Of a stretch of DNA of 64,000 nucleotides, positions 17,846 to 63,420 are shown piece by piece. The notes under the pieces are model-generated. The model ran no database searches. It had not been told where the DNA came from and worked only from the letters and a program-made list of their open reading frames with translations. The first letter of the stretch is position 1. Each line of letters starts with the position of its first letter. The stretch is from Octopus sinensis (taxonomy: Eukaryota): NCBI RefSeq assembly GCF_006345805.1, contig NC_042999.1, forward strand, positions 70,742,001-70,806,000, written 5' to 3'. The position numbers were made by a program, and so were the translations under genes.

Positions 17846-17899
17846 ATGTCACATGAAATTTCTCTTACTGTGGCAAATTTTCTTCTTTTTCTGCATATC

Positions 17900-39927: not shown

Positions 39928-40041
39928 GGTTTCATACCAGGTGTCTTTGGGGTTTCGCATGGTGTTATTCAGTTTGTAACTTATGAAGAAATGAAATCTC
40001 TATATAACAAGTATCACGAGAGACCTATACATTACAGGCTG
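39928..40041 (+). CDS. SLC25A32: Mitochondrial folate/FAD carrier, internal exon (human exon 5 equivalent)
   Basis: tttatag|...|gtaaga, 114 nt. Translates GFIPGVFGVSHGVIQFVTYEEMKSLYNKYHERPIHYRL (human [38 protein letters not shown]). Confidence 0.96.
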
Positions 40042-40157: not shown

Positions 40158-41605
40158 TCAGGTCATCCCATAAGTTCTGTCCGATTTTACCTTTTTTAAA
40201 ATTGAATGAAATTTAATAGTATTTTAGAATGTCTAATGGAATTAAAAATTATTTTTATGCATTTGTGTACATTTAAACTAATTAAATATTATTTTACAGA
40301 ATAATAGAATTAAAATTTCTTCGATTAAAACCCTTTCTAACATGGAAGTATCCAAAGAGCATTTAAGGCACATAATGCTTTATGAGTACAAAAAAGGAAA
40401 CTCTGCAGCCAATGCAACTCGAAACATACACTCAGTTTATGGGAAAGAATGCTTGAATGAAAGAACTTGCAGAAGATGGTTTGCAAAATTCAGAAGTGGG
40501 GATTTCAGCTTTGAAGATGAAGATTGAACAGGACGTCCAGTTGAGTTTGATAAGCTCCTTGAGGCATTACTTGAAGAAAATCCTGAATTATCAGTTGAAG
40601 AATTGGCAACAAAGCTTAGTTCAAACCATACAACTGTTCATCATCATCTTCAACAACTTGGAAAGGTTCCTAAACTTGGAAAATGGGTGCCTCATGAATT
40701 GTCCAAAAGTAACCACAAATCCTGAGTTGACATTTGCTCTTCTCTCCATTCTTGCAAACTCATTTCACCCTTTTCGGATAGACTTGTGACTGGTGGCGTA
40801 AAATGGATTTTTTATTAAAATGTTAAATGTCGTAAACAGTGGCTTGGTAGAAGGGAAAATGGTCCACCACAACCGAGAAGGGAACTTCATAGAAAAAAGG
40901 TTCTTCTCTGTATCTGGTGGGATTGCAAAAGAGTAATTCACTTTGAATTGTTACCACCTAATTCAACAATCAATGCTCAAGTTTACTGTCAGCAATTAGA
41001 GCGTTTGAACCAAGCTTTGAATAAAAAAAGACCCGCTTTAGTCAATCGAAAAGGAGTGATGTTTCATCAGGACAATGTGTGACCCCACACTGCAAAGATC
41101 ACATCAGAGAAGATTGAAGAGCTTGGTTGGGAAAAAATTCCTCATCCACCTTACTCTCCCGACCTTGCTCCTTCAGACTGCCATTTATTTCGTAGTTTAC
41201 AGAATGATTTGGGGAACATAACTTTCGCAAGCCAGGAGGAGGTTGAAACTGACATTTCAGAGTTCTTCGCTTTGAAACCAAAAGGGTTTTGTCCAAAAAA
41301 TTCCTCATCCACCTTACTCTCCCGACCTTGCTCCTTCAGACTGCCATTTATTTCGTAGTTTACAGAATGATTTGGGGAACATAACTTTCGCAAGCCAGGA
41401 GGAGGTCGAAACTGACATTTCAGAGTTCTTCGCTTTGAAACCAAAAGGGTTTTACATTGATGGGATTAAAGAGCTTGTAAATAGATGGAAGGAAGTCATA
41501 GATAATAAGGGAAAGTACATTGATGATTAAATTTCAATTAAATATCACATTTGATTACTTGTTTTCTTTATTCAAAATTCGGACAGAACTTATGGGATGA
41601 CCTGA
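40158..41605 (+). mobile_element. Mariner (DD34D) transposon, both TIRs intact, inactivated
   Basis: TA|TCAGGTCATCCCATAAGTTCTGTCCGA ... TCGGACAGAACTTATGGGATGACCTGA|TA. 1448 bp, or 1285 bp without the internal duplication. Transposase 40342-41530 has WVPHEL, HQDN-34aa-D and YSPDLAPSD, 4 in-frame stops, and its first catalytic Asp is mutated (TGGVKW). Confidence 0.97.
41132..41453 (+). repeat. 159-bp tandem duplication inside the mariner
   Basis: Copies at 41132-41290 and 41295-41453, with gtcc filler; one substitution seen (gttgaa vs gtcgaa). Confidence 0.92.
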
Positions 41606-44600: not shown

Positions 44601-46091
44601 AATTGAACCATCAAAAATGGATATATTTTGGTTTCAAGGCTGGTTTTTGTTGATTGTTCTTGGTGTATCTCTAATAAAATAAAAGATATTAATAGACATT
44701 ACATTATTTTCTTATGGCAAGCTTGTAAGTCATAGATGAACTATTCTTTTATATAATGTATATAAAAAAATATGTTAGCTGTGTTAAAGGATTGCTTGTT
44801 AACTAATATTCATCCAGAGTTAATGTATCTTCTGATATTTCGTCTATTGTGCTTAATTGCTATTAACAATTACCATCCTACTATGTTTATTCCACTTTTT
44901 CTTTTTGTTATACATTCATCTAAAATGTACAACTAATTAATTACAGTCTGGATTCTCTGGTCAGATTCGTTTTGATAATCAATTTCTATTTTGTTTTTTT
45001 GTTAATTTTTATAAAGTGTTTTTATTATGAAAGCCTTTATGTTGTTTATACCAACCAAGTCTGAAATAAAAGATATTTGTTAAATAGGTTCCTAGATTAT
45101 TGTTAATTGTTATACTGATATATTTAAGGCATGATACTATTCAAATATTTGGGTCAAACACTGGTTCCTTCTGTGACTTCCAGAGGCTCTGATATGGATT
45201 TATCCATATTAATATCTTAGCAGTTTAGAAGGACCTGCAAAGGTTATGGGCATTGCTTCTCTGCCTCTGACTATCTTAAATATGTTCACCCCCCCCCCAC
45301 TACCTTTGCGGACTATAGGTTGTCTACACTGGTATAGACAAATGAATGATGCATTTACATGAGGTGCACTTACATAGGTCAGTGTATTGTGAACATGTGG
45401 TGTAGTTAGAGACAGTGTGAACATGCAGAAGATATAAGCAAAAGACCAATGAAAAATATGATTGGTGGAGGGGAACAGATTTTTGTTTCCGTGTTTATCT
45501 AATGTTCTTATTGTTTTTAATTTTGAAAGTTTTTTTTTTAAATAATTGATTCATAACAACCTCCATAACATCTAACATAAGATTGTTTATATAGATATTT
45601 TTATTTTTAGCTATGTTAATAAAATTATGTAGATACTTTATATGCTCTAGTTGAAATAGAAAGTAGTTTCTTTCATTAAGTTTTCTGTCAGTTCATATTT
45701 CATGGTTATTTAGATTTTCCAACATTTATTTTTTTCCTATTCAGTGCTCCCAACCCATTTTTGGTATTTATTTATATCATGTATTGAATACTAAGTATGA
45801 AAATAGTCCACATTGATTGAACTCTCTCTCTCTCTAATGTTGGTTTACGTGTCAGTAACTTAGTGGTTTGGCAAAAAAGATATAGAATAAATATCAAGCT
45901 TAAAAAAAAGACGTAATTACTGTTCATCTCTGACTAAAACCCTTCAAGATGGTGCTCCAAGATGACTACAGTCCAGTGACTGAAATATGTAAAAGATATA
46001 TTTTTGTTCATTCATTCACTTGTTTTGCGTCTGTTTTTCCATGCTTGCATGAGTTGGACAAATATGTTGATTTATGTTGATTTATGTTGAT

Positions 46092-46569
46092 ATGTAATAA
46101 ATAACACACATTCCTCTCACTTATATGTACTATTCATTATATTACATATTCTTCAAGACCAAATTTTTATGAAGCATTCAACAAAACAGAAACTTTCAAT
46201 GATTAAATTTTCAATATCAAATTTATTATTAGATTAAAAAGAAATTAAAAAGATTTGAAATTTTTTTCCCATAGAATAATAAATGGATTTCAATATCCAC
46301 CCTGGCAATCAGTAATTTCTTTATAAAAGAGGACATTTAAGTAAAGACAAGAGGTAAAGCCTACAGAGATCGACACCATTATAAATTTCTGGAAATTATT
46401 TTAAGCAATCTCCTTGATGAAGACAAATATAGCTCCAGTGGAATTTGAACTCAAAATGGAGAAGAATGAAACTAAGTCATGAAATCCATTCATTCTAGTG
46501 TTCTATATTCTCAGCCATTTTCAGTGCTCTACTTCATTTAAACAATAATTAATAACCACTGTAAACTTT
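46092..46569 (+). repeat. Left arm of a locus-specific inverted duplication (partner 53035-53677)
   Basis: For example caatctccttgatgaagacaaatatagctccagtggaatttgaactc..gaaactaagtcatgaaatccattcattctagtgttctatattctcagccattttcagtgctctac is the near-exact reverse complement of 53232-53370. Confidence 0.93.
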
Positions 46570-47141
46570 GTTCTCTATAGTTTTGTAGAGTATAAATTTC
46601 AACTAGTTAAGCCATTGTCAGACTGCGATGCATTGATGTTAATCTTGGCTTTATATAGTTTTTGTTGAGGTAAAATCTTCCTTGGATGTGTGGGTTTGAG
46701 TGGAGTGGTAATTATGTGTTAGAGTGGATTGTTATATTACTGTTCATCTCTTTGACTTAGAATTTATTCATGTATATAGAACTTTGTAAGCAGGTGTGTT
46801 TCTTTTGGTTGGTAGTTATATGATATGTCAGTGGTTTTAGTCATTTTTGGTTTTATTAGATATAATTCTTTGCTTTGACAATGTAGAGATGAAAAGTATA
46901 AAGTCCAGTTTTTAAAAACTTAATGTTTAATAAAAAAAAATTTCTTCAAAACATCACTCCATAACAACCCATCCTAAAACCTAACCACCACTCCACCCAG
47001 ACCCATACACCCAAGGAATATTTTAAATCAAAAAGAAATGATATAGAGCCATAATTAACTTCAATGCATCACAATCGGATGATGGCTTAACTGCTTGGAA
47101 CTTCAAAGCCTGAAGTTACTGTCAATAATATTGTTTAGGAA

Positions 47142-47146
<5 letters not shown>

Positions 47147-47200
<54 letters not shown>

Positions 47201-47260
47201 AATATTAAAATATGCTAGACCACTGGTTTTAATTGATTAATATCAATTCTACCCTTATTA

Positions 47261-47302
<42 letters not shown>
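47147..47302. repeat. Two (TA)n arrays separated by a ~75-bp spacer
   Basis: Direct reading. Confidence 0.9.
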
Positions 47303-47306
<4 letters not shown>

Positions 47307-47431
47307 GAAAGAAGGGCACTCAACACATTTATTGGGAGTTACATGTATAGATCAAAACAGTTTGTGTGTATGTGTACTGTTGGCGATTTTTTTCCTCCGT
47401 CTTCCCTTCCTTGGATCTTTCCTTTTCCTAT

Positions 47432-47466
47432 GTTTCTGATGAAGAGCTCTGCTCAAAACGTTAAAT
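47432..47466 (+). ncRNA. Type I minimal hammerhead motif with G12>A, in a Penelope-pLTR-like repeat between (TA)n arrays
   Basis: gttt-CTGATGA-A-GAGC[tct]GCTC-AAAA-C-GTT/-aaat. Confidence 0.65.
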
Positions 47467-47548
47467 CCTTCTTTCTTTCCTTTCCTGAGCATCCAATAAC
47501 ACTATACTTGTTCCACGGTCTCGTGTTGTTGTGTTTTCATGTTTGGAT

Positions 47549-47553
<5 letters not shown>

Positions 47554-47601
<48 letters not shown>
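47554..47601. repeat. (TA)n microsatellite
   Basis: Direct reading. Confidence 0.95.
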
Positions 47602-47603
<2 letters not shown>

Positions 47604-48023
47604 AAACTCCGAAGTCTCTCACCTTGTGTAATTCTTCTAGCAAGAACAAGATGACTGTTGTTTTTTTAATATACTTTCCTATGTGTATTGGATACCCTCT
47701 CTCTATCTTTTTAAACTCTCCTTCCCCTCCTCTCTCCCTCACACATACACACCTATTAAAAGGAGATGTTTATGTGTTTAAAGCAAAGGGACAGCAGTGG
47801 ACCAGCTACTTTCTTCTTGTTTTGACTAATCACCCTATTTAAATAGTGTATCCTATGGAGGATTTTCACTTTCTTTTCTGTATTGATCTGTTTATTTAAT
47901 GCTCCTTCCTCAATGTTAAGCTCATGTTTTTTTGATTTCTTCCTGCTTATCTCTTTCTGTTGCTTATCTTTTCCGTACTGATTTTCTTTTTGTTAAAACT
48001 TGGCCATTTCCTCTTGATAAACA

Positions 48024-49335
48024 TCCGGCACCTGTGTCGGTGGCACATAAAAACACCATCCGAAGACCCGGCAAGACTAGTCAGGCCATAATCTGTGGCC
48101 CCAACCTGGGACGTAGTCAGTCCACCTGTGCATACCTTCCTTCTTGTGACACTTGTGAAGACCTTTTGAGGCAAGTGAAAGTGAAAATCAAAATAAAATA
48201 GATGAACATCAATGGAATTTGTATCTTTGTGGTACCAGGGCCGGTGGCACACAAGATAACCATCCGAACATGGCCGTAGCCAGTACCGCATCGACTGGCC
48301 TCTATGCTGTGGGCTCATAACAAACACCATCCGATCGTGGCCGTTCGCCAGCCTCATCTGGCACCTGTGTCGGTGGCACATAAAAACACCATCCGAAGAC
48401 CCGGCAAGACTAGTCAGGCCATAACCCGTGGCCTCTACCTGGGACATAGTCAGTTCACCTGTGCATACCTTCCTTCTTGTGACACTTGTGAAGACCTGTT
48501 GAGACAAGTGATCAAATCAAATCAAATCAAATCAAAATAGATGAACATCAATGGAATTTGTATCTTTGTGGTACCAGTGCTGGTGGCACACAAGAAAACC
48601 ATCCGAACGTGGCCGTAGCCAGTACCGCATCGACTGGCCTCCGTGCTGTGGGCACGTAACAAACACCATCCATCTGGCACCTGTGTCGGAGGCACATAAA
48701 AACATCATCCGAAGACCCGGCAAGACTAGTCAGGCCATAACCCGTGGCCCCTACCTGGGACGTTGTCAGTTCACCTGTGCATACCTTCCTTCCTTCTTGT
48801 GACACTTGTGAAGACCTGTTGAGGCAAGTGAAAATCAAATCAAATCAAATCAAAATAGATGAACATCAATGGAATTTGTATCTTTGTGGTACCAGTGCCG
48901 GTGGCACACAAGAAAACCATCCGAACGTGGCCGTAGCCAGTACCGCATCGACTGGCCTCCGTGCTGTGGGCACGTAAGAAACACCATCCGATCGTGGCCG
49001 TTCGTCAGCCTCGTCTGGCACCTGTGTCGGTGGCACATAAAAACACCATCCGAACGGGCCGTTCGCCAGCCTCGTCTGGCACCTGTGTCGGTGGCACATA
49101 AAAACACCATCCGAGCGTGGCCGTTCGCCAGCCTCGTCTGGCACCTGTGTCAGTGGCACATAAAATCACCCACTACACTCTCGGAGTGGTTGGCGTTAGG
49201 AAGGGCATCCAGCTGTAGAAACACTGCCAGATCTGACTGGCCTGGTGCAGCCTTTGGGCTCCCCAGACCCCAGTTGAACCGTCCAACCCATGCTAGCATG
49301 GAAAGCGGACGTTAAATGATGATGATGATGATGAT
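48024..49335 (+). mobile_element. Head-to-tail trimer of an RTE 3' UTR, plus three 61-bp sub-repeats and tail
   Basis: Unit starts at ~48024, 48358 and 48673, with the sub-repeat run at ~49015, 49076 and 49137. gaagacccggca corresponds to the ORF2 end (EKTRQ) seen at 58003. CpG-rich; ends aaatgatgatgatg. Confidence 0.9.
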
Positions 49336-49405
49336 GAAACACTATTTACTCATAACAGTAGGAGAACATTTATATTATGATTGATATTCATTACACCATG
49401 CAGTA

Positions 49406-49765
49406 TACATTATTTACATTTGATGGATATTTGTCCTCATCTTGTTTGTTGTTAACTATACCATATGCCCACGGGCATATGGCTTAGTAGCCATATGGCA
49501 TATGGCTACTAACCCCAAGATTCCGAGTTCGATTCCACGCAGTGACATGAATAATAATAGTCAGAATAATAATAATAATAATAACATCATAAAATACCTT
49601 AGGAACTAGAACCCAGGTTCAAAATTTCCTTAAGACACCTGATGAAGGCTGGAGGGTATATCAGCTGAAGCGTGTTAACAACAAACAAGATCAGGACAAA
49701 TATCTGTCAAATGTCAATAAGGTAAATAATGTACATAATTCGTCTTCTCTTAAATCTACAACTGT
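49406..49765 (+). mobile_element. tRNA-headed hammerhead element (copy 2) with an inverted tail fragment at its 5' side
   Basis: Head gggcatatggcttagtag..ctactaaccccaagattccgagttcgattcc; core CTGATGA 49639-45. 49406-49456 is the reverse complement of the tail. accatgca(g/a)tat flanks at 49395-49406 and 49766-49777. Confidence 0.88.
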
Positions 49766-50002
49766 ACCATGCAATATGTGGTATAATCTACTGTTCTTTT
49801 GCTGACTTCACTTATGGCTGTGACCATACTGGGGCACCACTTTTGAAGGTTTTTAGTCAATCGTATCAATCCTATTAACTCAGTTGACCATTTCTTTTAT
49901 CAGCCTCTATATAATGAATTGCTAAATTTGTGTTTTCACATTAACATCTTCCTATTTGTGTGTATGTACATATGTGTGTTTGTCTGTGTGTGTATGTAGC
50001 CA

Positions 50003-50320
50003 TATCATCATTGTTTTAACATCTACTTTTCACATATATATGTCAAACAGAATTCATTGGACAGATTTTCTGTGGCTGGATGCCCTTTCTGTTACTAATC
50101 ATCACCTGTTTCTATGTAAAGTAATATAGTCCGCTTTGGTTGGACATGTTTTCATGGAAGGTTGGAAACAAAAGAAATCACATTTATGGCTGAAATTGTT
50201 TACCTCTATTGCACAAAACACAGAGACAGACACACATGCATGCGATAAGCTTGTTGAGTTTCCATCTGAGAAATCTACTCACAAGGCTAGTATTTTTTCA
50301 CCAAGGCAGTACTGCATTCC
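50003..50320 (-). mobile_element. Decayed family A SINE
   Basis: atcatcattgttttaacatctactttt..ggctggatgccc..gagtttccatct..aaatctactcacaaggc. Confidence 0.6.
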
Positions 50321-50578
50321 ATGCTTAACAGAATGTTTATAAACTGTTTCCAACTTGTCACACATCTATACTAAGTCTAAGAAGATACAAAATTGTGATA
50401 GACCAGTTTCTGCGTATGTTTTCTTAACTTCAATTTGCTGCAAAACTAAACTTCACAGCCAAGTTATGGGTATTTATCTATTTTACTTTGTCAGAAGAAA
50501 CAGAACAGTACGGTGCAGGTTCTCTTAGGTTTAAATAAACCTAGATAATAGAATTTGTAACTTTTTTGTTTTCTTTTT

Positions 50579-50582
<4 letters not shown>

Positions 50583-50632
<50 letters not shown>
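50583..50632. repeat. (TA)n microsatellite
   Basis: Direct reading. Confidence 0.95.
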
Positions 50633-50635
<3 letters not shown>

Positions 50636-51237
50636 ATGGTTGAGTGAAGCTAATGAAGTTATTTAGTGTAAATGTTTTTAGGTTACTGATTCATTGGAAA
50701 ACATAAGAGAAAAATGTAGTTTTATGAATTATCACCATGGTAAAAATGAAAGAAACAGTTTTAATGTGCGTCATTGCAGGTGAATGTAGTATAATCAATA
50801 AGTTCAACCCTTTCGTTACCATATTTATTTTGAGATGCTCTGTGTTTCTTTCAATTAATCTTAAATGTAACCAAGAATTATAACTCAAGTTATAATTAAG
50901 CTAGTGTCAGGAACATAAATTGTGACTCAGGTTTGGTGGAAGATTTTAATTCAAAACTTATGAGAACAAGATATTTGTACTACTGCACCAGAGGTGTTCT
51001 CAGTATTGATATTGAAAGGGTTAAGGAAGTAGTGACCATCCTTGTCATTGTAAAAAGGGGAGAACACCCAAATAGCTAGAATGTGTTGGTGTGGAAATGT
51101 CTGTTCATCAGGTAGTTTTCCTTTTTCTTTTCCTGAGACATTGGTACCTGATTGGTAGGTACAGCATTCCAGATGTATGAGTGGTACTATATCATATGGT
51201 GTGTGTTTAATCAACAATTATTTATTTTCTGTATTTT

Positions 51238-51440
51238 ATCATCATCATTTAACATCCATACTCCATGTTGGCATGGTTGGACAGTTTGACATTAACTGAT
51301 GTGTCCAATGACAATATTGAGTTTCAATGTCTGCTTGGTGTTGCTTTTATGGCTGGATGCTCTTCCTAATGCCAACCACTTAGTGTGGACTGGGTGCTAT
51401 TTTTGTACCACCAGCACTACTGAGGTTGCCCTGCAGTTTA
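51238..51440 (-). mobile_element. RTE tail copy
   Basis: atcatcatcatttaacatcc..ccatgttggcatgg..ggctggatgctcttcctaatgccaaccac. Confidence 0.75.
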
Positions 51441-52184
51441 CAGGACTATAAGTCCTGGGGTAGGTGGTGTGGGTCAGTTTCAGAAGTCAAAACCTTTTCT
51501 GTGTATGGGAATTGTGTTTGGCTGCCATGCGAAATGATCAGATTGTAAGATCAATATTTGTAGGGAATGTGATGGTTTTTATCTGTGAGTTGTTCATGAG
51601 TAGTGAGAAAGTAATTTTGCAGGTTCACTTTTTAGGTTTTAGAGTGTGGCTCAAATGTTAAACTTGAATTGAAGGATGTTTGGCAGGATATCCTTGTCTA
51701 GCAGAAGTTTCTGAAGCTTGTGGGTAATGTCTCATTCTGGTTTAGCTCTGTGTCTCTAATCTTTTCTTTTAGGTGATAGCTTTCCTGATAATTTCTTTCT
51801 TAGTAACCATATTCATTCACCAGTTCAGTTCTCTACTCATTGTCTCCTTTATTTTGACTCCAACCAGTCATCTTCTCTCATAACCAGGTACTCTTTTTGT
51901 GGTTTTTGTTAAGCCTATGCTCAAATCAACTTACCAGCGTAGTTCAGATTTTCATAGCTGATAAATTGCTCTGTTCATTTGAAGACATCCAGATTAAAAT
52001 GATACTTTCTAGCACTTTTAGAACATTATTTGGTGTTTAGTAATTTGCTCAAAATAAATTTATATAAAAAAAGAAAAAATGTTTGGATGCATGATTTCTA
52101 CACATCTAACATTGATTATGTTAAAGTATTGAAGATAACATATCATTCTTTCACTCACTTTCTTCTGTATTTTTTGTCTTGTAG

Positions 52185-52330
52185 AGTTCACTGGAGTACA
52201 TAACTTTTGCTGCCATATCAAAAATGATTGCTGCTGCAGCAACATATCCATACCAAGTTGTTCGATCACGGCTTCAAGACCAACATGCATCCTATGTGAG
52301 TTGTAGAGACGTCATAGAAAAAACATGGAG
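52185..52330 (+). CDS. SLC25A32: Mitochondrial folate/FAD carrier, internal exon (human exon 6 equivalent)
   Basis: cttgtag|...|gtaagc, 146 nt. Translates [48 protein letters not shown](R); PYQVVRxRLQDQH is diagnostic of SLC25A32. Confidence 0.96.
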
Positions 52331-52629
52331 GTAAGCCACTATTTCTTATCTGGAGGAACTTGCAAGTGTCTCTCTTTGTTCTTTTTTGCATTCTTTTGCT
52401 TCTTCATTTCATGGGGGAGGGGAAAGGACCTGTGTAGTCATTTTTTTTTTGTATCTTACATTCACACAAGGATGTAAAAATAATATTCATTTATTTGGTC
52501 TAATTTGATGTTTGTAAATTTTTATGATAAAAAAAAGAATGAATTTTCATTTTTAAGGCTGATAAGGTGTTGATAGTTAATCATGTCATGTCAATGCGTT
52601 TTATGGCCATGACCTGTAATTCTCAAATG

Positions 52630-52790
52630 AGTTGAGTGCAAGCATGACCGTGGTTAAGAAGTTTGCTTCACAATCACATGATTTTGGATTTTATTATCCT
52701 GCACAATGCCTTGGGTTAGTGTCTTTTCCCACAGCCTTGGGTTGGCTAATACTTTGTCTTTGGGAGGACTGAAGATAGACCACAGCTGTG
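52630..52790 (+). mobile_element. Family A SINE 5' part
   Basis: gtggttaagaagtttgcttcacaatcacatg..ccttgggttagtgtc..agccttgggttggctaa. Confidence 0.6.
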
Positions 52791-53034
52791 GAAACTCATC
52801 ATATATATGAATGTGTGTGTGTTAGTCCATGTATCCATGTCCTTTGCTGCTGTATGTTGACTCTAAAGGATCTAAACATTGGCAAGAAAACTGAAAAAAC
52901 CAATGCACTTCATATAGATTCTCTTGTGATGTTGTATATAGTTATATACACCCATGTCATTTTGGTTTTAGAAATAGTTTTGAAAGTCTGCAAACAGTGA
53001 TTACAGCATAGGTAGCTAATTTACATTTGAGAGT

Positions 53035-53677
53035 AAAGTTTACAGTGGTTATTAATTATTTGGAGAAGTGTTTTTTACTTGGTCAGTCTCTTTGGACATG
53101 ACTGAATTAGCTGACTGTAAGGCTCTGCTTCTGTTTTTTTCTAAGTGCTCGTTTTTAAATAACCAACAACTGGTCAGACATTTTGGCAGCAAATCTTTGG
53201 TGTGACACAGAACCAGCAACCATGGTAATAGGTAGAGCACTGAAAATGGCTGAGAATATAGAACACTAGAATGAATGGATTTCATGACTTAGTTTCATTC
53301 TTCTCCATTCGGAGTTCAAATTCCACTGGAGCTATATTTGTCTTCATCAAGGAGATTGATTAAAATAAGTTCCAGTGATTTATAATAGTGTCAATCTCTA
53401 TAGGCTTTATCTCTTGTCTTTACTTAAATGTCCTCTTTTATAAAGAAATAACTGACTGATTGCCAGTGGATATTGTAATCCATTTATCATTTTATGAAAA
53501 AAAATCAACTTAAAAATCTTTTTAATTTTTGAAAATAAATTTATTCATAAATTTGATATTGAAAATTTAATCATTCAAAGTTTCTCTTTTGTTGAATGCT
53601 TCATAAAATTTTGGTTTTGAAGTATATCTAATGTAAAGAATAGTACATGTGAGAGGAATGGGTATTGTTTATTACAT
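53035..53677 (-). repeat. Right arm of the inverted duplication, with ~170 bp extra at 53062-53231
   Basis: Reverse complement matches 46092-46532 and 46543-46569. Confidence 0.93.
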
Positions 53678-56600
53678 TAATGTTGATTTGATTTCAGATT
53701 GTAGTATGATGTGTGTTTGTGAAGATATCTGATGAATTAGGTCAAGGAGAGAGAAACTGAGATTGTGTTAGGCATAATTAAACATGTCACATTTTACCTT
53801 CATGTAGATTATCTTCAACTCAATAACAAGAGCAAAAATTATATGGTTACATTTAAAAAGAAGAAATTTATAAAGATATTTTTTTTTGCTACTTAAGTTA
53901 TTTATGTGTAATTTAAGCAAAACAAATTATATATTTATGTGATTTAAACAACTCAAATTATGTATATGTGACGGAAAGATATGAGGCCTAGCAGTTAATG
54001 TGTTAGGCCCACAATCAAGGTCATGGATTTGATTCCTGAGCCAGATGGGGCATTTCTCATTGCCTGTGTCTACTCCGCTGAAAATTATTACCAGTTGGCT
54101 ATTGGTGAAGTCCCCTCTCCCTATTATGCTCTAATTGGTCAAGTGTGAGGGGCCTAAGAGAGTGCTTGTGTCTAAATATGCACATAAAACAATTAATGAA
54201 ATTATGATGCAAGTTAAGATCATACAGCTAAACATTTTATTTTCATGTAGATCCTTAAAAGTAGCATTGGCTTAACAGTAAACAGTTGTAGGTTTTTCAA
54301 GTAAATTTATACAAAATTGTCTCCAATGTGAGATGTAACATCTAAAGACCAGCCTTATACACTTCACCCTGAGTCTTACTTGGCCTCTGTCTTCTACAGG
54401 AAAAAATGTTATTTAGAAAGTGATCCTTTTGAAAAAGATTATTTCTCAGAAATGGAATCTCCACTATATCTTGAACTCCGTTGTTCAAATTCTTCATTTT
54501 ATAAGATATTTCCATGTGTAATCTCAGTTGTTGAAATAATAGTAATCCAAAGAAATTTTATAAATACATAAAAAAAAAGTGTGGTGGGGGTGATTATTTG
54601 ACATATGTCAAAATGAGGATCAGTTAAGCCCGAGATTGATTTAGTTCACTATAGCACACTCCTAAATTTGTGGTCTTGTATCTGTGCTAGGAATCACTAT
54701 TGTGTTATTGTTGGAAGTGGTACTTAAAATGCATTAGAAATTATTGAGCTTTAGATATTTTGACTATTTAATGAAATTAATCTTTTCTTTGAAAAATTTT
54801 GTTGAATGTTTGCTAAAACTTGTACTATAAATTAAAAGCAATTCAATTTCATTAGTTGGAGTTATTTTCATTTTTAAAGGATTGAAGTTATTAATGAAAA
54901 GACTTCTTTATTAGACTTGTTTCATAAAAATTGTATTTAATTACAAATAGGCTTGAGAATATTTTAATGAATCTGCATTTCTTCTAGTAATGCTAAACCT
55001 GCCTGTATCTTTCAAAATAATTTTGCTTTTGGAGGTGTTTAATTAAAACTTTTTTTTATCGATATGTTTAGAATATAATTGTCAGTTTTATTAGAATTTT
55101 AATTAGTAGCATGAATGGTCTTGGGGAAAATAGAAATAAAAGTTACTCTCATTAAGCAGTATAAACTGTTGTAGTAAGTTTAATATTTGCTAAAATATAT
55201 TTCATTTGTTGGAATATATTTTAAGACTGTTCATATACTATTTAATATTTTAGTATTATGTATGATGTGGGTTAAATAATTTTGTGTTAATCTCTGTTAA
55301 TGATGTCAACTTTACATCTCATAAGCCAACCTAAATGAACTTTACATTTGTCTCATCATATGATTAGAGATAGTGTTAAAATGTCAATTGGTAGGTTTAG
55401 TTTAAAAATGTCAGACAGTAGGATATTTATAAAAAGTGATGTTTTTGAAGTGTAATTTTAATTTAATGTTTTATATATGATTTAAGAAATTGTATCATCT
55501 TTAGTTTAAAATCTACTGATTTTCGTGTAAGTTTCAGATTTGAAAATACTCTCCCCAAAACCTATCACCAATGTCTTGGTGTCTTATTGTTCTAAGATCA
55601 AATTCTGCTGAGATTGAACTTGAAGTTAGTCTTAGTAAGGTGCAGGAGTTGATTCAGTCATCTGTGTAACCTTTTTACTATATTTGTTCTAAATGATTTA
55701 GTTTTAAATGTTTAAAAATTATTTATATAAATGATTAAATTCATATTGTATTTATAATCAGTTTTCAGTATGAAATTAAGAAGCACCTACTAAAGACTGT
55801 TTATATTGTTTGCATTAAGTCTTGTTTGGCACAAACAAATGAAGTAGGCTATTTTTCCACATTTACCCGTAACATGTCCTTAAGTAAGGGGTAAACTCTG
55901 TAAGTATGTCTCTCCCAGGTTAAGATCTCAATAAGAATAAGCTGAAAGTCTTACTTAATGGTTGGGGTGATATATAAAGGCTGTAATACTTGAAATATTC
56001 TAGTGCCTTTCTTACTACTTGTGTAAATGATTCTTCTATTTTGTGCAATACTCTTACAAGTGATTCTGGGTAAGGAGTCACTAGGGCACAGGAGCCGGCT
56101 CAGATCAGTAGCTTAGTGTTGGGGGCTAAGATGTGTCTCAGGTAGAGTCATTGGCTTGTGACTAACAGCTTGGAAAGGAATGGGTGCTGCTAAGCTAACT
56201 TGCTCATGATACATTCATGATGATGACAAGCAAACTAGAATCCATACAGGATCAGTTGTCACCCAGATTAACATCAAAGAGTGGACAAACCTCAATTTTG
56301 CCAACTCATTATTGGGTAACAAAAGACAGAAAAGTGGCAAAATCTGGTTGTGATGTCATTAAAAATACCTTAGTGATTACATGGTCAAGGGATAGGAAGA
56401 AAGGAAAGATTCTTACAATTCTAATCCATGTCCAATAGTGTCGTTCTTTTACTTTGGATGTTTGTGTAATTCAAAAGGAGAAATAGATTTTATTGTGAAA
56501 TAAAAGATTTTTAATTCCTAATTTTGTATAATCATGCAAAACTGGCTGTGGGAATTATATATTTGATAGAGCAGAAAAAGTTTGCCTTATCATCCCTATT

Positions 56601-57990
56601 TTTCTTGTGGAAAGATAAGATTTTCCATGTGCTGCTAATTGTTGCTCTAAGGGTGACATAGCTCAAAAGTAATTGAAAAACCTTGTTGTATAGGCTTTTC
56701 TTGATGGTGAGATACATAGAATTTATAACAAGAACTACAACAATAATAATGTGCTGCTTGCTTATTATTAAAAATTCACTTTAACTTGATAACTTTTATA
56801 ATTAAAATGCTTCAAGTGCATCCTGCAGATCTTTACCTAATCAAATTCAACACCACCAAAAAACTCATTTTTTTTGTGCTTTTCATCGTGAGATAAAATG
56901 GAGGAATACAATAAAAAGATGAATGTGATTATAGTGATGAAACTATTGTTGGATGGACTTGATGTTTGAGACTACTTTATGAAAATCTTAATCTTGGCAA
57001 AATTTGTTGAGGTGTAAGAGTGTAAACATCAGTCAGAGTGTGTATTTAGGAAACACCTGTGCATGTGTTGGAGAGTTGTGTATATGCAAACATATACATT
57101 AAAAAAGATATTTGAGATAAAATATTAAAATCTTATGAGATATATTTTGTAACTCTAGTTACTGTGTTTTGTCAATTTATTTATCTTTCCACTTCAGTCT
57201 ACTTTGGAATAGAACAGGTTTATTATATCTATACCTCTCACTGTCTTATCTAGGATTTCATTTCGGTTCAATTTGCTAATGTTATCTCTCTGTAGCATGC
57301 TTTGTATTTAAATTGTGAGTGTGAGAATTTATCTGTAGTTTTAGTTGTGTGCAATGAAGACTAACATGTTTTATGTTCTATAATTATTATTTATCATCAA
57401 TTGATATGAGATGTGCCCTTGTGTTTGTCACACTGCTGGTAAGCAATGCTGTAACAATAATGATGACAAACTGAAAGTAAAGTCCTATGTCTTGTGGCTA
57501 TAACAAGGTCAGTGGACATAAATGATGGGAGTATTGGAATAAATGTCTTATATTCAGTACTTGACCCTTTAACATTCAAACCAGCCAGATCAAGCCTCTT
57601 ACACCTATCTTGCAACGTTATTCTAAAAGTAAACAACCAGTTATCAAAATATGAGATAATATATGATTTCCTCAAAGTAATGTGAACAAATAAGCATTAC
57701 ATTTGACTGAGTAATCTTAATACTAAAAGGTTATCTAATCCCTCTAGATTTTCTTTGAAAATTGTGTGTTTGATATAGCTTTTTAACTTTTTGGAGTTGA
57801 GAAAACACTTCTTGGAATCTACTGCAGTCAATCCAGTTGTCTGCACTACTCTATAAATTTCTGACTTTGTATCATTATGAGAAATAGAAAATTTATCAAG
57901 AATATAACGAAAGGGAACTGTCATTTTTAATGACAAGCGTATGCTATGATGTCAAATGTTTTTTAAAAATGCAGTATTTCTATTAAATTT

Positions 57991-58630
57991 GTGCTGTGCG
58001 CGAGAAGACCCGGCAGGACAAGTGAGTCCACAACCCGTGGCCTTCTACATGGGATGGAGCCAGCCTACGTATGCATACCTTCCCTTCTTGGGACACAAAA
58101 CTCTACTTGTGAAGACGTGTTGAGGCAAGTGAGGATCAGAATCGAAATCGATCAATGGAAATTGCGGATGTGCTACCAGTGCCGGTGGCATGTCGAAACT
58201 CTGCTTGTGAAGACCCATTGAGGCAAGTGAGGATCAGAATCGAAATCGATCAATGGAAATCGATGAATGGAAATTGCAGATGTGTTACCAGTGCCGGTGG
58301 CATGTAAGAGAACTTTCCGTTTCGCGACCGTTGCCAGCACCGCCCCGTTTCGTGTCCGTTGCCAGCCTTGCCTGGCCCTCGTGCCGGTGGCACATAAAAA
58401 GCACCATCCGTTTGTGGCCGTTTGCCAGCTCTGTCTGGCACCAGTGCGGGTGGCACGTAAAAAGCACCCACTACACTCACGGAGTGGTTGGCGTTAGGAA
58501 GGGCATCCAGCCGTAGAAACACTGCCAGATTTGACTGGGCCTGATGAAGCCTTCTGGCTTCACAGACCCCAGTAGAACCGTCCAACCCATGCTAGCATGG
58601 AAAACGGACGCTAAATGATGATGATGATGA
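57991..58630 (+). mobile_element. 5'-truncated RTE LINE (last ORF2 codons plus 3' UTR) with an internal ~100-bp duplication
   Basis: gctgtgcgcgagaagacccggcaggacaagtga = AVREKTRQDK*; duplication 58105-58203 / 58204-58315; tail aaatgatgatgatg; CpG-rich. Confidence 0.88.
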
Positions 58631-58789
58631 TTATGTTGTTGAAAAGTGTATTTCTTTTCTAATTTAACTGAAGTTTAATAGTTATATCATCATTATGAAT
58701 TATTCCTAAATTAACGTAATCTTATTAACGGACCTCCTCCCACCAAAAGAATGTGTATTAGGTACCATGGTTATGCATATAAACTATAT

Positions 58790-59070
58790 ATCATCATCAT
58801 CATCATCATTTAATGTCCATTTTCCATGCTGGCTTGTGTTGGATGGTTTAATTGGGGCTGTTTTGGCAGGGTTTTTATGGCTGGATGCCCTTCCTAACAC
58901 CAACCACCTTACAAAAGTTAAGCTCCAAAAGTTTTCATCATCATCATCATCATTTAACGTCTGCTTTCTATATTGGCATGGGTTGGATGGTTTGACATGG
59001 AAATGGCGAGCAGGGAGTTGTCCAGACTCCAACTGTCTGCTGTGACATGGTTTCTGCAGCTGGATGCCCT
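58790..59070 (-). mobile_element. Two short RTE tail copies
   Basis: catcatcatcatttaa(t/c)gtc..ggctggatgccctt starting at ~58790 and ~58937. Confidence 0.75.
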
Positions 59071-59529
59071 TACTAATGCCTTCTCTCGGTGATTTACAAT
59101 TGGTTGAAACTGTTGAAATGGGGATTGCTGCCTGAAGTATTTACTGTTTATACTAGTACTAGACTACCCATGACCTGTTGGGTCACTGATGATTCAGGTT
59201 ATAAAACATTGAAATGAAAGTTACTTTTATGATGATTCAGTTAAATATTTCAATTTGTTCGGGTCATCATAGGTCTGGTTTACAAGTTCATGCTTAAAGT
59301 TTTATTGGTTATTTACTACATCTAATAGAAATAGAACTCCTAGGATAAACTTGAACTCCAGTAACAGCATTTATTTAGTATGTGCACATTTCTACAAAAG
59401 CACAAAAGGAATTCTTATATAACGTAAGCATAAAATTAATGGAAACAATTTTCACAGTATTATATATTCCCATTTCAGGGTTACGTTACTTTCAGAGTAT
59501 TTTCCCATAATATGCCATTTTGGCTATTT

Positions 59530-59631
59530 ATGAAGGTACCCCCCAAAATTATGTATCTTGGGAATCTGTGGTCTGATTTACGCAAAACTTATTTTATTCT
59601 GTTTGTATTCACATTTCAGGGGTACCTTCAT
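59530..59631. repeat. 13-bp inverted repeat, probable MITE remnant
   Basis: atgaaggtacccc ... ggggtaccttcat. Confidence 0.5.
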
Positions 59632-60376
59632 TTCATAGTATTTCTCCATTATGCACCAGATTGACTGTATCAAATTACAGGCAAGCACATATGTAAGCAC
59701 GCACACGAGCATGCATGCAAGCAATCACAGAGTTTTAGTATTATATAGATTGAGATTATCCTTGGCAAAAACTCCAAATATATCTTATAGGATATATGGC
59801 ACAATTAATTGTGTGCCAGTTTTCTTTCATATTCTCTTGTGTTCATTCTTTGTTATACTTATGTATTTAAACGTTAGTACATTTGTATTTATAAGCCTTT
59901 TTTGATAAATTTTTTATAATTGTACCAATCTGTAATTTATAAAGTAGAGACATATTTTGAATAATTGTGATTGTGAAACAGATAGGAAACAAAAGTAAAA
60001 ACATCTGCTTCTTTCCTGTTATTCCTGCACTCACAAATGTATAACTTACGCATACACAGACATAAACTCACACACATTTTTATACGTTTATGTGTTTATA
60101 CTTTTATGTGTGAGTGTGTATGTGCGTGCGTGCATGCACATACACACACAATTATTTATATATATGAATGTGTGTCTGTCTGTCTACCTCTCTATCCATC
60201 CATCCATCCATCCATCCAAAGCAAATAAGCAACAAGGATGCCCAGGTATTAGTGCATTACGACACTAATACCTTGACGTCCTTGTTATTTGCTTTTTATT
60301 CATCTTACTCCAAGCTGTGTGGATAATACTGGAGTGACTTGGTGCCTCAACTTAAGCACCTAATTCAACAGAATCT

Positions 60377-60377
<1 letters not shown>

Positions 60378-60438
<61 letters not shown>

Positions 60439-60671
60439 CTAAAATCTCTAAGAGATCAGTGCAGCAATTGTACTGGCAAATAATATTTATAACCATTTGG
60501 GGTTAAAAAATCCAGTAGAGTCTGCTCGAGTGGGCAACCATGTTTAAGTGGCTATGAATATATATATATATGTATGTGTATATATATATGTATGTGTATA
60601 TATATATATATATATGTATGTGTATATATATATATATTATGTATGTGTATATATATATATATATGTATGTG

Positions 60672-60720
<49 letters not shown>

Positions 60721-60940
60721 ATATATATATGTATGTGTATATATATATGTATGTGTATATATATATATGTATGTGTATATATATATATATATATGTATGT
60801 GTATATATATATATGTATGTGTATATATATATATGTATGTGTATATATATATGTATGTGTATATATATATGTATGTGTATATATATATATATGTATGTGT
60901 ATATATATATATATATGTATGTGTATATATATGTATATAT

Positions 60941-60979
<39 letters not shown>
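60378..60979. repeat. (TA)n and compound (TA)n/GTATGT satellite
   Basis: (TA)n at 60378-60435; repeated gtatgtg(ta)n units at 60556-60979. Confidence 0.95.
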
Positions 60980-61182
60980 CATCATCATCATCGTTTAACA
61001 TCCGCTTTCCATGCTAGCATGGGTTGGACGGTTCAACTGGGGTCTGGGGAGCCCGAAGGCTGCACTAGGCCAGTCAGATCTGGCAGTGTTTCTACAGCTG
61101 GATGCCCTTCCTAACGCCAACCACTTCGAGAGTGTAGTGGGTGATTTTATGTGCCACCGACACAGGTGCCAGACGAGGCTGG

Positions 61183-61184
<2 letters not shown>
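60980..61184 (-). mobile_element. Young RTE 3' tail inserted within a (TA)n array
   Basis: Reverse complement of 49125-49335 with about 6 mismatches; (TA)n on both flanks. Confidence 0.9.
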
Positions 61185-61236
<52 letters not shown>

Positions 61237-61344
61237 TAGTGGTTATTTTAATTAAATTTAATTTATATAAATTATTTTATGTATTGGCTTAAGTCTTTCT
61301 TTGTTTGATTTGCATAATAGTGGTTTTGTCTCTAATTTAATTTA

Positions 61345-61382
<38 letters not shown>

Positions 61383-61419
61383 TGGATGGAACTTTTGAAT
61401 GAGAGAGAGAGTGAACCTG

Positions 61420-61730
61420 GAAGACATGGGGCAAAGTACTAAAGGATGACCTCAGGATGCTGAACCTTTCAGACGAGATGACAAAGGACCCAGATACATG
61501 GTGTCTTATTGTACTGAAGAAGACCCGTCCTCCACAGCAGAAGTGTTAAGGCTGCATCTCCTGGTGAAGAGGACTGCAAGAGTTCTGTGTCAGCACCATA
61601 TTAAAAGCTGTAGACTTACAGCTAAATCAGACTGGAACCTGGTGCATCTGTCTGCCTTGCCAGCTCTGACCAAACTGTCCGACCCATGCCAGCGCGGAAA
61701 ATGGACGTTAAAGGACAATGATAATGATAT
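61420..61730 (+). mobile_element. RTE ORF2 C-terminus plus shortened 3' UTR
   Basis: KTWGKVLKDDLRMLNLSDEMTKDPDTWCLIVLKKTRP, then the tail gtccgacccatgccagc..ggacgttaaa. Confidence 0.75.
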
Positions 61731-61773
61731 GTGCAAGCGTGCGCACACACACACACTCACACACACGCAGAGC

Positions 61774-61806
<33 letters not shown>

Positions 61807-62869: not shown

Positions 62870-63420
62870 CTTCTCTGTCACTTGCTCACTCACCTGTCTA
62901 TTCGCCCTTGTCCACTCACTAATCAAACCTTGGTCACACATACTTACTCACTCACTCATGCTCTTTAATTCACTTACTCACTCACTCAATTACTCTTGCT
63001 TGCTCGCTCATTCACTCTTGCTCCCTCATTCACGCACTCTTGCTCACCTATTCACTCACTCACTCTTGCTCACTCATTCACTCTTGCTCACTCATACTCT
63101 CTCTTGCTCACTCATTCACTCTTGCTCACTCACTCACTCACATGCATTCATTCACTCACTCTTGCTTGCTCATTCACTAACTCACTCTTCACTCATTCAC
63201 TCACAGTCTTGTTTGCTCATTCATTTACTCTTGCTCACTCATGCCCTCTTACTCACTCATTCTTGCTTGCTCATTAACTCGCACATTTAGTCTTGCTTGC
63301 TCACTCACTCACTCTTGCTCACTCTTGCTCGCTCACTCACTCTTGCTCGCTCACTCACTCTTTCTTGCTCGCTCACTCACTTAGTCTCACTCAGTCACTC
63401 TTTGTCACTCTTCCTTTCTC
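62870..63420. repeat. Degenerate (CTCA)n / ctcactcttg minisatellite
   Basis: Direct reading; it explains the HS/L-rich pseudo-ORFs at 62784-63508. Confidence 0.9.

What the first reader, a model, noticed from the sequence alone, without database searches (positions are those of the whole stretch)
46060..53690. Locus-specific ~480-bp inverted duplication bracketing exon 6
Seen: 46092-46569 and 53035-53677 are reverse complements (about 80-95% by eye, plus a ~170-bp indel). Both include AT-rich sequence and the same decayed SINE with shared mutations, so this looks like a local duplication rather than two dispersed copies. The arms lie 5.6 kb upstream and 0.7-1.3 kb downstream of exon 6. The left junction carries (atgttgattt)x2.7, a motif found just outside the right arm, which suggests template-switch or snap-back repair. 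Known: reverse-complementary intronic matches promote back-splicing and exon skipping and form ADAR substrates, and coleoid cephalopods edit heavily. Inference: exon 6 (146 nt, frameshifting if skipped) may be circularised or skipped, which would give an RNA-structure control of the carrier.
Basis: partly seen in the sequence, partly recalled or inferred. Interest (0 to 1): 0.7.

Follow-up and report, generated by a model that had tools for sequence, protein, structure and literature searches.

The report
Intronic inverted duplication around carrier exon
Two diverged, reverse-complementary copies of a ~0.5-kb piece of intron really do sit on either side of one exon of a mitochondrial carrier gene, but this is an ordinary kind of genomic by-product and nothing in the sequence shows that it controls the gene.

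Summary
Positions 46092-46532 and 53232-53677 are reverse complements (blastn E 2e-163; 92% over aligned columns, 88% counting gaps). A further 32-43 bp block also matches, and a 171-bp piece is present only in the right arm. This is the best inverted pair in the 64-kb window.

Each arm holds one decayed SINE-like repeat plus about 215 bp of AT-rich sequence found nowhere else in the window. The two SINE-like copies share 98 differences from a fresher copy at 34 kb. Only 7 and 5 differences are private. They are therefore copies of each other, not independent insertions.

The arms lie in the introns on either side of a 146-nt Mito_carr exon (SLC25A32-like) with strong splice sites. In silico they form about 440 bp of duplex.

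- The ATGTTGATTT motif is a direct repeat outside both inverted arms. That is the layout of a target-site duplication next to terminal inverted repeats, not what snap-back predicts.
- A second inverted pair from an abundant repeat (97%, 208 bp) also brackets the exon.

Genome-wide copy number, presence in other species, circRNA, exon skipping and editing could not be tested. The most likely reading is a neutral local inverted duplication that probably acts as an ADAR substrate. Interest is low.

The parts
46063..46091 (+). Perfect tandem repeat TATGTTGATT x2.9 (= ATGTTGATTT, ATGTTGATTT, ATGTTGAT) abutting the outer end of the left arm
   Evidence: TRF, 100% matches; exact-pattern search; sequence read
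46092..46315 (.). Left arm, non-SINE AT-rich part (GC 23%). It pairs with 53449-53677.
   Evidence: 89.4% identity over 216 aligned columns, 7 indel events, K2P 0.115. No third copy in the window by blastn or by an nhmmer profile.
46316..46532 (-). Left arm, decayed SINE-like repeat (sense on the - strand; B-box-like GAGTTCAAATTCC at 46440-46452)
   Evidence: 95.4% to the right-arm copy with no indels. 66-68% to the dispersed copy at 34120-34350. 98 shared versus 7 and 5 private differences. Motif found.
46533..46543 (.). 11-nt filler in the left arm where the right arm has 171 bp
   Evidence: Alignment of the arms
46544..46586 (.). Left arm, inner block. It pairs with 53060-53018: exact for 26 nt, then fading.
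   Evidence: blastn 94% over 32 nt; 34 of 43 identical
52185..52330 (+). Bracketed coding exon ('exon 6'), 146 nt, of a mitochondrial carrier gene (SLC25A32-like). Strong 3' and 5' splice sites.
   Evidence: Sequence. Pfam Mito_carr E 1.3e-5.
53018..53060 (.). Right arm, inner block
53061..53231 (.). Right-arm-only 171-bp piece lying exactly at the 5' end of the SINE-like repeat. Unique in the window.
   Evidence: Alignment. No other match by blastn word size 7 or nhmmer.
53232..53448 (+). Right arm, decayed SINE-like repeat (sense on the + strand; GAGTTCAAATTCC at 53312-53324)
53449..53677 (.). Right arm, non-SINE AT-rich part
53674..53683 (.). Perfect 10-bp palindrome ACATTAATGT spanning the outer junction of the right arm
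   Evidence: Sequence read directly
53680..53689 (+). Single copy of ATGTTGATTT, 2 nt outside the right arm, on the same strand as the left-junction copies
   Evidence: The only three exact copies in the window are here and at 46064 and 46074. Empirical P of such a shared direct 10-mer is about 3e-4.
49125..49332 (.). Upstream member of a second inverted pair that also brackets exon 6 (abundant repeat family)
   Evidence: 97.1% over 208 bp with no gaps to 60978-61185. Cofold ddG -314 kcal/mol.
60978..61185 (.). Downstream member of the second inverted pair

Best explanation
This is a real, moderately old, local inverted duplication of a piece of intron. The duplicated unit was about 0.5-0.65 kb. 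It consisted of a short block, an already heavily decayed SINE-like repeat, and about 215 bp of AT-rich unique flank. One copy now lies in the intron upstream of a 146-nt exon of an SLC25A32-like mitochondrial carrier gene, and the other lies in the intron downstream.

Shown: the two copies descend from one another or from one common, already decayed source, and have since diverged by 5-12%.

Inferred:
- The duplication arose from DNA repair or replication rather than from insertion of a mobile element, and it is selectively neutral.
- In the pre-mRNA the two arms can anneal into an imperfect duplex of about 440 bp that loops out the exon.
- The most likely consequence is ADAR binding and clustered A-to-I editing of the arms, with at most low-level back-splicing or skipping.
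- It is not a regulated switch of the carrier.
For: - The match is real and extends beyond the SINE on both sides.
- The arms share 98 differences from the fresher 34-kb copy, against 7 and 5 private ones.
- The non-SINE part and the 171-bp piece have no other copy in 64 kb by blastn or nhmmer.
- Neither arm has a target-site duplication of its own (read).
- Six-frame Pfam scans of 45.9-53.9 kb find only the Mito_carr exon, and no transposase, reverse transcriptase or integrase.
- The 8-12% divergence rules out an assembly artefact.
- Pairing capacity: duplexfold -574 kcal/mol, cofold ddG -423 kcal/mol with 442 intermolecular pairs. 434 L-R pairs persist in the MFE of a 3.6-kb construct that includes the neighbouring foldback and the exon.
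- Ordinariness: a second inverted pair from an abundant repeat also brackets the exon, and many others span other exons.
- In O. vulgaris most A-to-I editing is in intron and 3'UTR hairpins, and only 296 high-confidence circRNAs were found (PMC9699675).
Against: - Genome-wide copy number of the arm is unknown. A mid-repetitive composite family of about 10^4 copies could place two members 7 kb apart by chance without a third in 64 kb.
- The direct 10-mer outside both arms (P about 3e-4) is not predicted by a simple inverted duplication.
- The SINE part is significantly better conserved than the flank (95.4% versus 89.4%, Fisher p 0.019). This could reflect rate differences in AT-rich sequence, gene conversion or constraint.
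- No RNA data were available, so pairing, editing and splicing effects are all inferred.
Confidence: 0.6

Rival explanations
1. The two arms are independent insertions of one composite repeat family: a roughly 0.5-kb non-autonomous element that contains a SINE-like module. Their proximity and inverted orientation would then be coincidence, as with inverted Alu pairs.
For: The arms end at the same points on both sides, as family members would. The region is rich in interspersed repeats. Absence of a third copy in 64 kb does not exclude a family of up to about 10^4 copies. Genome-wide copy number could not be tested.
Against: Neither arm has flanking target-site duplications of its own or recognisable termini. 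Two members within 7.6 kb at only 5-12% divergence is improbable for a low-copy family. A very abundant family should show more copies in 64 kb, and none are found even with a profile. The direct repeat outside the pair is not explained.
Confidence: 0.2
2. The arms are the terminal inverted repeats of a single 7.6-kb unit (46092-53677) flanked by a target-site duplication. This would be a composite or macrotransposon-like segment that moved within the intron while carrying exon 6, or inserted as a block.
For: The layout is exactly direct repeat, inverted arm, interior, inverted arm, direct repeat. The adjacent 10-mers are TTATGTTGAT and TAATGTTGAT (9/10). The exact 10-mer ATGTTGATTT lies on the same strand at both outer junctions and nowhere else in the window. 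Empirical P is about 3e-4. Long TIRs with 9-11 bp TSDs are known for Mutator-like elements (background knowledge).
Against: The interior holds a conserved, correctly oriented, correctly ordered coding exon with intact splice sites. There is no transposase remnant in any frame. The arm termini resemble no known TIR, and the arms are built from a SINE-like repeat plus unique flank rather than a transposon end. No paralogous empty site exists, and the flanks do not continue one another across the abundant-repeat fragment at 46023-46060. The motif coincidence was noticed after the fact.
Confidence: 0.05
3. The inverted pair is a maintained RNA-structure switch. Pairing of the arms loops out exon 6 and diverts transcripts to a 146-nt circle or to a frameshifting skip, tunable by ADAR, and so sets the level of the carrier.
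For: The arms flank the exon and pair very stably in silico, with no competing partner in the window. Skipping 146 nt shifts the frame. Reverse-complementary matches promote both back-splicing and exon skipping in other animals (PMC8330042, PMC8938519). The SINE half of the duplex is better conserved than the rest.
Against: No RNA evidence exists. Splice sites are near consensus, which favours constitutive inclusion. The left arm is 5.6 kb from the exon, and the exon is short for a single-exon circle (background knowledge). Another inverted pair also brackets the exon, so this layout is not special. Octopus circRNAs are few and low. Indels and mismatches have accumulated freely in half of the duplex.
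Confidence: 0.05

Closest known systems
Reverse-complementary matches (RCMs) in flanking introns, such as inverted Alu pairs at mammalian circRNA loci and RCMs in C. elegans that promote back-splicing and exon skipping (PMC8330042; PMC8938519)
   Same: There is one arm in each intron flanking the same exon. The complementary stretch is long (about 440 bp), partly made of a SINE-like repeat, and predicted to form a strong inter-intronic duplex.
   Different: No circRNA or skipped isoform is shown. The arms are not two members of a dispersed family but a local duplicate that includes unique flank. The left arm is far (5.6 kb) from the exon. The exon is short and has strong splice sites.
Long intronic inverted-repeat dsRNA as ADAR hyper-editing substrates, and ADAR antagonism of circRNA biogenesis (PMC9699675 for octopus; PMC8938519)
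   Same: An intramolecular duplex hundreds of bp long with about 92% pairing lies inside one pre-mRNA. In octopus most editing is reported in intron and 3'UTR hairpins.
   Different: Editing at this locus was not and could not be examined here.
Replication- or repair-based inverted duplications (template switching of the FoSTeS/MMBIR type, fold-back or quasi-palindrome strand switching); from background knowledge
   Same: An inverted copy lies a few kb from its source. There is an indel with filler sequence at one internal junction (171 bp versus 11 nt). A 10-bp palindrome sits at one outer junction.
   Different: Junction microhomology is only 2 nt (AT). The shared flank motif is direct, not inverted, which a simple snap-back does not give.
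DNA transposons with long terminal inverted repeats and 9-11 bp target-site duplications (Mutator-like, Pack-MULE, composite macrotransposons); from background knowledge
   Same: Inverted termini are flanked by a direct repeat of about 10 bp.
   Different: There is no transposase remnant and no other copies. The interior is host intron plus a functional exon in its native order.

Membership tests
Intronic reverse-complementary matches that drive back-splicing or exon skipping | Reverse-complementary sequences located in the two introns that flank the same exon(s) | tested here: met
   L 46092-46586 lies in the upstream intron and R 53018-53677 in the downstream intron of exon 52185-52330.
Intronic reverse-complementary matches that drive back-splicing or exon skipping | Inter-intronic pairing is thermodynamically favoured over pairing within one intron | tested here: met
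   Cofold ddG is -423 kcal/mol. 434 of 447 paired L-arm nucleotides pair with R in the MFE of a 3.6-kb construct. The arms have no other partner in the window. This is in silico only.
Intronic reverse-complementary matches that drive back-splicing or exon skipping | A back-splice or skip junction is observed in RNA and depends on the arms | not testable with these tools
   No RNA-seq access. The published octopus circRNA set (296 circRNAs) is not listed in the held supplements.
ADAR hyper-editing substrate | Long (>100 bp) largely paired intramolecular dsRNA | tested here: met
   About 440 bp, 92% paired. In silico only.
ADAR hyper-editing substrate | Clusters of A-to-G RNA-DNA differences in both arms | not testable with these tools
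   No transcriptome data.
DNA transposon with TIRs and TSD (including composite or macrotransposon) | Terminal inverted repeats | tested here: met
   The arms satisfy this formally.
DNA transposon with TIRs and TSD (including composite or macrotransposon) | Direct target-site duplication immediately outside both termini | tested here: inconclusive
   The adjacent 10-mers match 9/10. The exact ATGTTGATTT lies 8 nt (L) and 2 nt (R) from the termini. P is about 3e-4, but the coincidence was noticed after the fact.
DNA transposon with TIRs and TSD (including composite or macrotransposon) | Transposase gene or remnant inside, or other family members with the same termini | tested here: not met
   No TE domain in six frames of 45.9-53.9 kb. 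No other copy in the window. Not tested genome-wide.
Repair- or replication-based local inverted duplication (template switch or fold-back) | Inverted copy close to its source that includes unique, non-repeat sequence | tested here: met
   The shared 215-bp AT-rich flank and the inner block are unique in the window.
Repair- or replication-based local inverted duplication (template switch or fold-back) | Junction microhomology or templated sequence consistent with the switch | tested here: inconclusive
   Only 2 nt (AT) at the outer junction. The shared motif has the wrong orientation for a simple snap-back. A palindrome at 53674-53683 could allow a strand switch.
Repair- or replication-based local inverted duplication (template switch or fold-back) | One arm absent (empty site) in an outgroup genome | not testable with these tools
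   No cephalopod sequence was reachable. The protein database returned only 4 ENA fragments at 67% identity or less. Metagenome scans were uninformative.
tRNA-derived SINE (identity of the repeat inside the arms) | Short dispersed copies of one family | tested here: met
   Copies at 34.1, 55.5, 42.5, 31.7 and 16.0 kb plus the two arms.
tRNA-derived SINE (identity of the repeat inside the arms) | tRNA-like head with polymerase III A and B boxes | tested here: inconclusive
   A B-box-like GAGTTCAAATTCC is present. No Rfam tRNA match at E<=10 in the arms or in the fresher 34-kb copy.

The most novel reading that the evidence does not exclude
The 10-bp direct repeat outside the two inverted arms is a true target-site duplication. 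Under this reading, 46092-53677 is a 7.6-kb unit bounded by inverted repeats that was cut out and re-inserted (macrotransposition) within the gene while carrying a functional coding exon. That would be a caught-in-the-act example of DNA-level exon mobility in a cephalopod. A second, equally unproven reading is that the pair is an editing-sensitive RNA switch for the carrier.
Probability: 0.03. Interest if true: 0.7.

Novelty: new member of a known kind. Interest (0 to 1): 0.2.

Why it matters
If the arms do pair in vivo, this locus would be a convenient natural test of whether a long intronic duplex in a heavily editing animal leads to editing, back-splicing or exon skipping. It has a single-copy duplex rather than a repeat-family pair, around one short frameshifting exon of a housekeeping carrier. 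The junction layout (direct repeat outside inverted arms, plus a palindrome at one junction) is a small puzzle about how such duplications arise. Beyond that it is one more intronic inverted repeat in a repeat-rich genome. It has no sequence evidence of selection and no demonstrated effect on the gene.

Tried and rejected
1. Reaching orthologous loci. A protein search with the exon 6 peptide returned only four ENA fragments at 59-67% identity and no cephalopod protein. The route through the look-up of encoding contigs was therefore closed, and I ran no further search on it.
2. Copy number outside the window. A 29-mer from the non-SINE arm part has 0 hits in JGI metagenomes. As a control, a 25-mer from the window's most abundant repeat hits only 2 contigs and matches only 40-70 bp. 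That collection therefore holds essentially no related genome, and the null result is uninformative.
3. Transposon reading.
4. Were the flanks once contiguous? The right outer flank does not continue the abundant-repeat fragment at 46023-46060. The score is no better than shuffles.
5. Does homology resume beyond the arms, for example after the foldback at 46594-47103? It does not.
6. Is the 171-bp piece templated from nearby? No other copy was found.
7. tRNA ancestry of the SINE-like repeat. No Rfam hit. A weak snoRNA-like hit at 46111-46191 (24.6 bits against a gathering score of 50) was rejected as chance.
8. Exon 7. It was not found up to position 64000 by tblastn or motif scans, so the skip junction cannot be placed in the window.
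9. Rejected as an explanation of the motif: read-through or retro-copy of the arm plus its flank. Every model that copies the flank predicts the reverse-complement motif.
10. The published octopus circRNA list was not among the held supplements.

Full report

A seed-and-extend search of 45.5-54.5 kb finds two ungapped inverted blocks: 46306-46532 / 53232-53458 (227 nt, 95%) and 46120-46235 / 53538-53653 (116 nt, 89%). Gapped blastn joins them into one HSP, 46092-46532 against 53677-53232 (452 columns, 88.05%, 17 gap columns, E 2e-163). It also finds a separate block, 46544-46575 against 53060-53029 (94%). That block is exact for 26 nt and fades by about 46586/53018.

Between the two blocks the right arm has 171 bp (53061-53231) where the left arm has 11 nt. 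In a self-comparison of the whole window this is the highest-scoring inverted pair. With 8-12% divergence and 6.4 kb of unique sequence between the arms, it is not a collapsed or duplicated assembly artefact.

**2. What the arms are made of.**

The inner 217 nt of each arm (46316-46532, sense on the - strand; 53232-53448, sense on the + strand) belongs to a short dispersed repeat. A fresher copy lies at 34120-34350, with decayed fragments at about 55.5, 42.5, 31.7 and 16.0 kb (nhmmer arm profile against the 34-kb copy, E 1.7e-4).

The repeat carries a B-box-like GAGTTCAAATTCC. No Rfam tRNA match is found in the arms or in the fresher copy. I therefore call it SINE-like; tRNA ancestry is not demonstrated. 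From memory it resembles the abundant Octopus SINE, but that is a lead and not a test. The organism itself was not verified with tools.

Against the 34-kb copy the two arms share 98 differences, with only 7 (L) and 5 (R) private. On columns where a second dispersed copy backs the reference state, the counts are 73, 7 and 5. The two arms therefore descend from one already decayed copy.

The outer 215-230 bp of each arm is AT-rich (GC 23%). It has no other match in the window by blastn or by an nhmmer profile built from both arms. The same holds for the 171-bp piece. The alignment runs uninterrupted across the 3' junction of the SINE-like repeat, and homology resumes on the far side of its 5' end. 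The duplicated unit was therefore flank, repeat, flank.

Divergence is uneven:

| Part | Identity | Mismatches | Indel events | K2P |
|---|---|---|---|---|
| SINE-like part | 95.4% | 10 | 0 | 0.048 |
| AT-rich part | 89.4% | 23 | 7 | 0.115 |

The difference is significant (Fisher p 0.019). Faster decay and slippage in low-complexity AT-rich DNA is the simplest reason. Gene conversion or constraint cannot be excluded with two sequences.

**3. Context.**

The bracketed exon is 52185-52330 (146 nt). It is preceded by a long pyrimidine tract and ...ttgtag, and followed by gtaagc. Its translation, [49 protein letters not shown], matches Pfam Mito_carr (E 1.3e-5).

Further + strand exons lie at about 25039-25215, 36888-37028 (Mito_carr E 3.5e-11) and 39928-40023. 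No downstream exon is found up to 64000, so the downstream intron exceeds 11.7 kb. The numbering 'exon 6' is plausible but not verifiable here. The left arm lies 6.1 kb after the previous exon and 5.6 kb before exon 6. The right arm lies 0.7-1.35 kb after exon 6.

Six-frame Pfam scans of 45.9-53.9 kb give nothing except the carrier exon. The intron between the arms is ordinary repeat-rich sequence:
- a foldback at 46594-47103;
- four (TA)n tracts;
- a 333-bp tandem array at 48022-49054;
- fragments of an abundant repeat family.

**4. The junction motif.**

TRF finds a perfect TATGTTGATT x2.9 at 46063-46091, abutting the left arm. The exact 10-mer ATGTTGATTT occurs only three times in 64 kb. 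All three are on the + strand: at 46064, at 46074, and at 53680, which is 2 nt beyond the right arm (sequences).

The extended match is ACAAATATGTTGATTT against ACATTAATGTTGATTT (13/16). The 10-mers that directly abut the arms are TTATGTTGAT and TAATGTTGAT (9/10). Sampling 300,000 random position pairs in this window gives a shared direct 10-mer in such flanks with frequency 3e-4. The coincidence is unlikely to be chance, although it was noticed after the fact.

The motif is a direct repeat outside inverted arms. Any model in which the arm was copied together with its flank (snap-back, read-through, retro-copy) predicts AAATCAACAT at the left junction, and that is not observed. The layout is that of a target-site duplication flanking terminal inverted repeats.

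That reading has serious problems:
- a conserved exon sits in native order and orientation inside the unit;
- there is no transposase remnant;
- there is no paralogous empty site;
- the right outer flank does not continue the abundant-repeat fragment at 46023-46060.

The right junction is a perfect 10-bp palindrome, ACATTAATGT (53674-53683). A nascent strand ending in ...ATGT could be extended on either strand there. This offers a strand-switch route that would write ATGT-TGATTT repeats and then ATGT-AATAAA... at the left site. It needs several steps and I regard it as possible, not shown. I leave the motif as unexplained.

**5. RNA-level potential.**

On the + strand transcript the arms are complementary.

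| Pair | duplexfold (kcal/mol) | cofold (kcal/mol) | ddG vs monomers (kcal/mol) | Intermolecular pairs |
|---|---|---|---|---|
| Arms L x R | -574 | -635 (monomers -68, -144) | -423 | 442 |
| 49125-49332 x 60978-61185 | -446 | -446 | -314 | 206 |

In a 3.6-kb construct (45800-47300 joined to 51900-54000) the MFE keeps 434 L-R pairs, against 13 pairs of the left arm with anything else. The arms would therefore pair if both are present in the same unspliced RNA.

This is not unique. The pair in the second row of the table is 97% identical over 208 bp and also brackets the exon. Many weaker pairs from the same family span this exon and other exons.

Several points argue against regulated skipping or circularisation:
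- both splice sites are near consensus;
- the exon is short for a single-exon circle, and the left arm is distant (background knowledge);
[quoted passage not shown] The authors ascribe this to ADAR melting intronic duplexes. Most A-to-I editing there lies in intron and 3'UTR hairpins (PMC9699675).

RCMs do promote both back-splicing and exon skipping in other animals (PMC8330042; PMC8938519).

**6. Explanation and rivals.**

- Best (0.6): a neutral local inverted duplication of an intron segment made by repair or replication. It now forms a long intronic dsRNA bracket whose most probable fate is ADAR editing.
- Rival (0.2): two members of a composite repeat family that lie close together by chance.
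- Rival (0.05): a TIR/TSD-bounded 7.6-kb unit.
- Rival (0.05): a maintained RNA switch.

The remainder is unassigned. The first two are separated by a single genome-wide search that I could not run. No cephalopod sequence was reachable.

**7. Novelty and score.**

The kind is well known: reverse-complementary intronic repeats, ADAR substrates and small inverted duplications. This is an undescribed instance with a mildly puzzling junction. Nothing in the sequence indicates function. Interest is 0.2.

Noticed in passing
49125-49332 and 60978-61185: A second inverted pair also brackets exon 6. It is 97.1% identical over 208 bp with no gaps. Both copies belong to the window's most abundant repeat family (...TTTCCATGCTAGCATGGGTTGGACGGTTCAAC...), which has about ten more copies in both orientations across the window.
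   Followed up: partly
48022-49170: A tandem array of a 333-bp unit (3.1 copies, 87%) with nested 62-bp sub-repeats (4.5 copies). It forms a GC-richer island (46% against about 32%) in the intron between the arms and is derived from the same abundant family.
   Followed up: no
46594-46735 and 46961-47103: A foldback or MITE-like inverted repeat (78% over 143 bp, 225-bp spacer) starts about 8 bp after the inner end of the left arm. Homology to the right-arm side does not resume beyond it.
   Followed up: partly
40819-41453: A mariner-type transposase remnant on the + strand lies just downstream of the preceding carrier exon (Pfam Transposase_1 E 2.9e-27, one in-frame stop). It contains a 159-bp tandem duplication that is 99.4% identical (41132-41290 / 41295-41453).
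   Followed up: partly
47146-47193, 47266-47303, 47553-47601, 50582-50633: Four perfect (TA)19-26 microsatellites lie in the same intron. They are mutually and self-complementary, so they add further potential intra-intronic pairing.
   Followed up: no
53674-53683: A perfect 10-bp palindrome, ACATTAATGT, lies exactly at the outer junction of the right arm. It is formed by the arm's last 4 nt, TA, and the first 4 nt of the ATGTTGATTT motif.
   Followed up: partly
60500-61000 and 62700-63500: There is a long imperfect TA/CA-type microsatellite of about 0.5 kb. Further on is a roughly 0.8-kb CT-rich repeat block with strongly negative GC skew (-0.29 for 62-64 kb).
   Followed up: no
L001 737-761 and L002 186-210 (JGI metagenome contigs Ga0210324_1403623 and Ga0164306_10019889): The 25-nt terminal motif of the abundant repeat family (CCATGCTAGCATGGGTTGGACGGTT) occurs exactly in two environmental contigs. 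They match the window over only 40-70 bp, so the motif is conserved beyond this genome or those samples contain related animal DNA.
   Followed up: partly
52331-64000: No further carrier exon is detectable downstream of exon 6 within the window. The downstream intron is therefore longer than 11.7 kb, and the predicted skip junction cannot be placed here.
   Followed up: yes
17857-19148 (+): Stop-free stretches here carry motifs I recognise by eye as retroelement protease (LDMGS) and integrase (HSGHPG, SDNGTQF). The two stretches I submitted to Pfam gave no hit at E<=0.01, so the retroelement fragment is suspected, not confirmed.
   Followed up: partly
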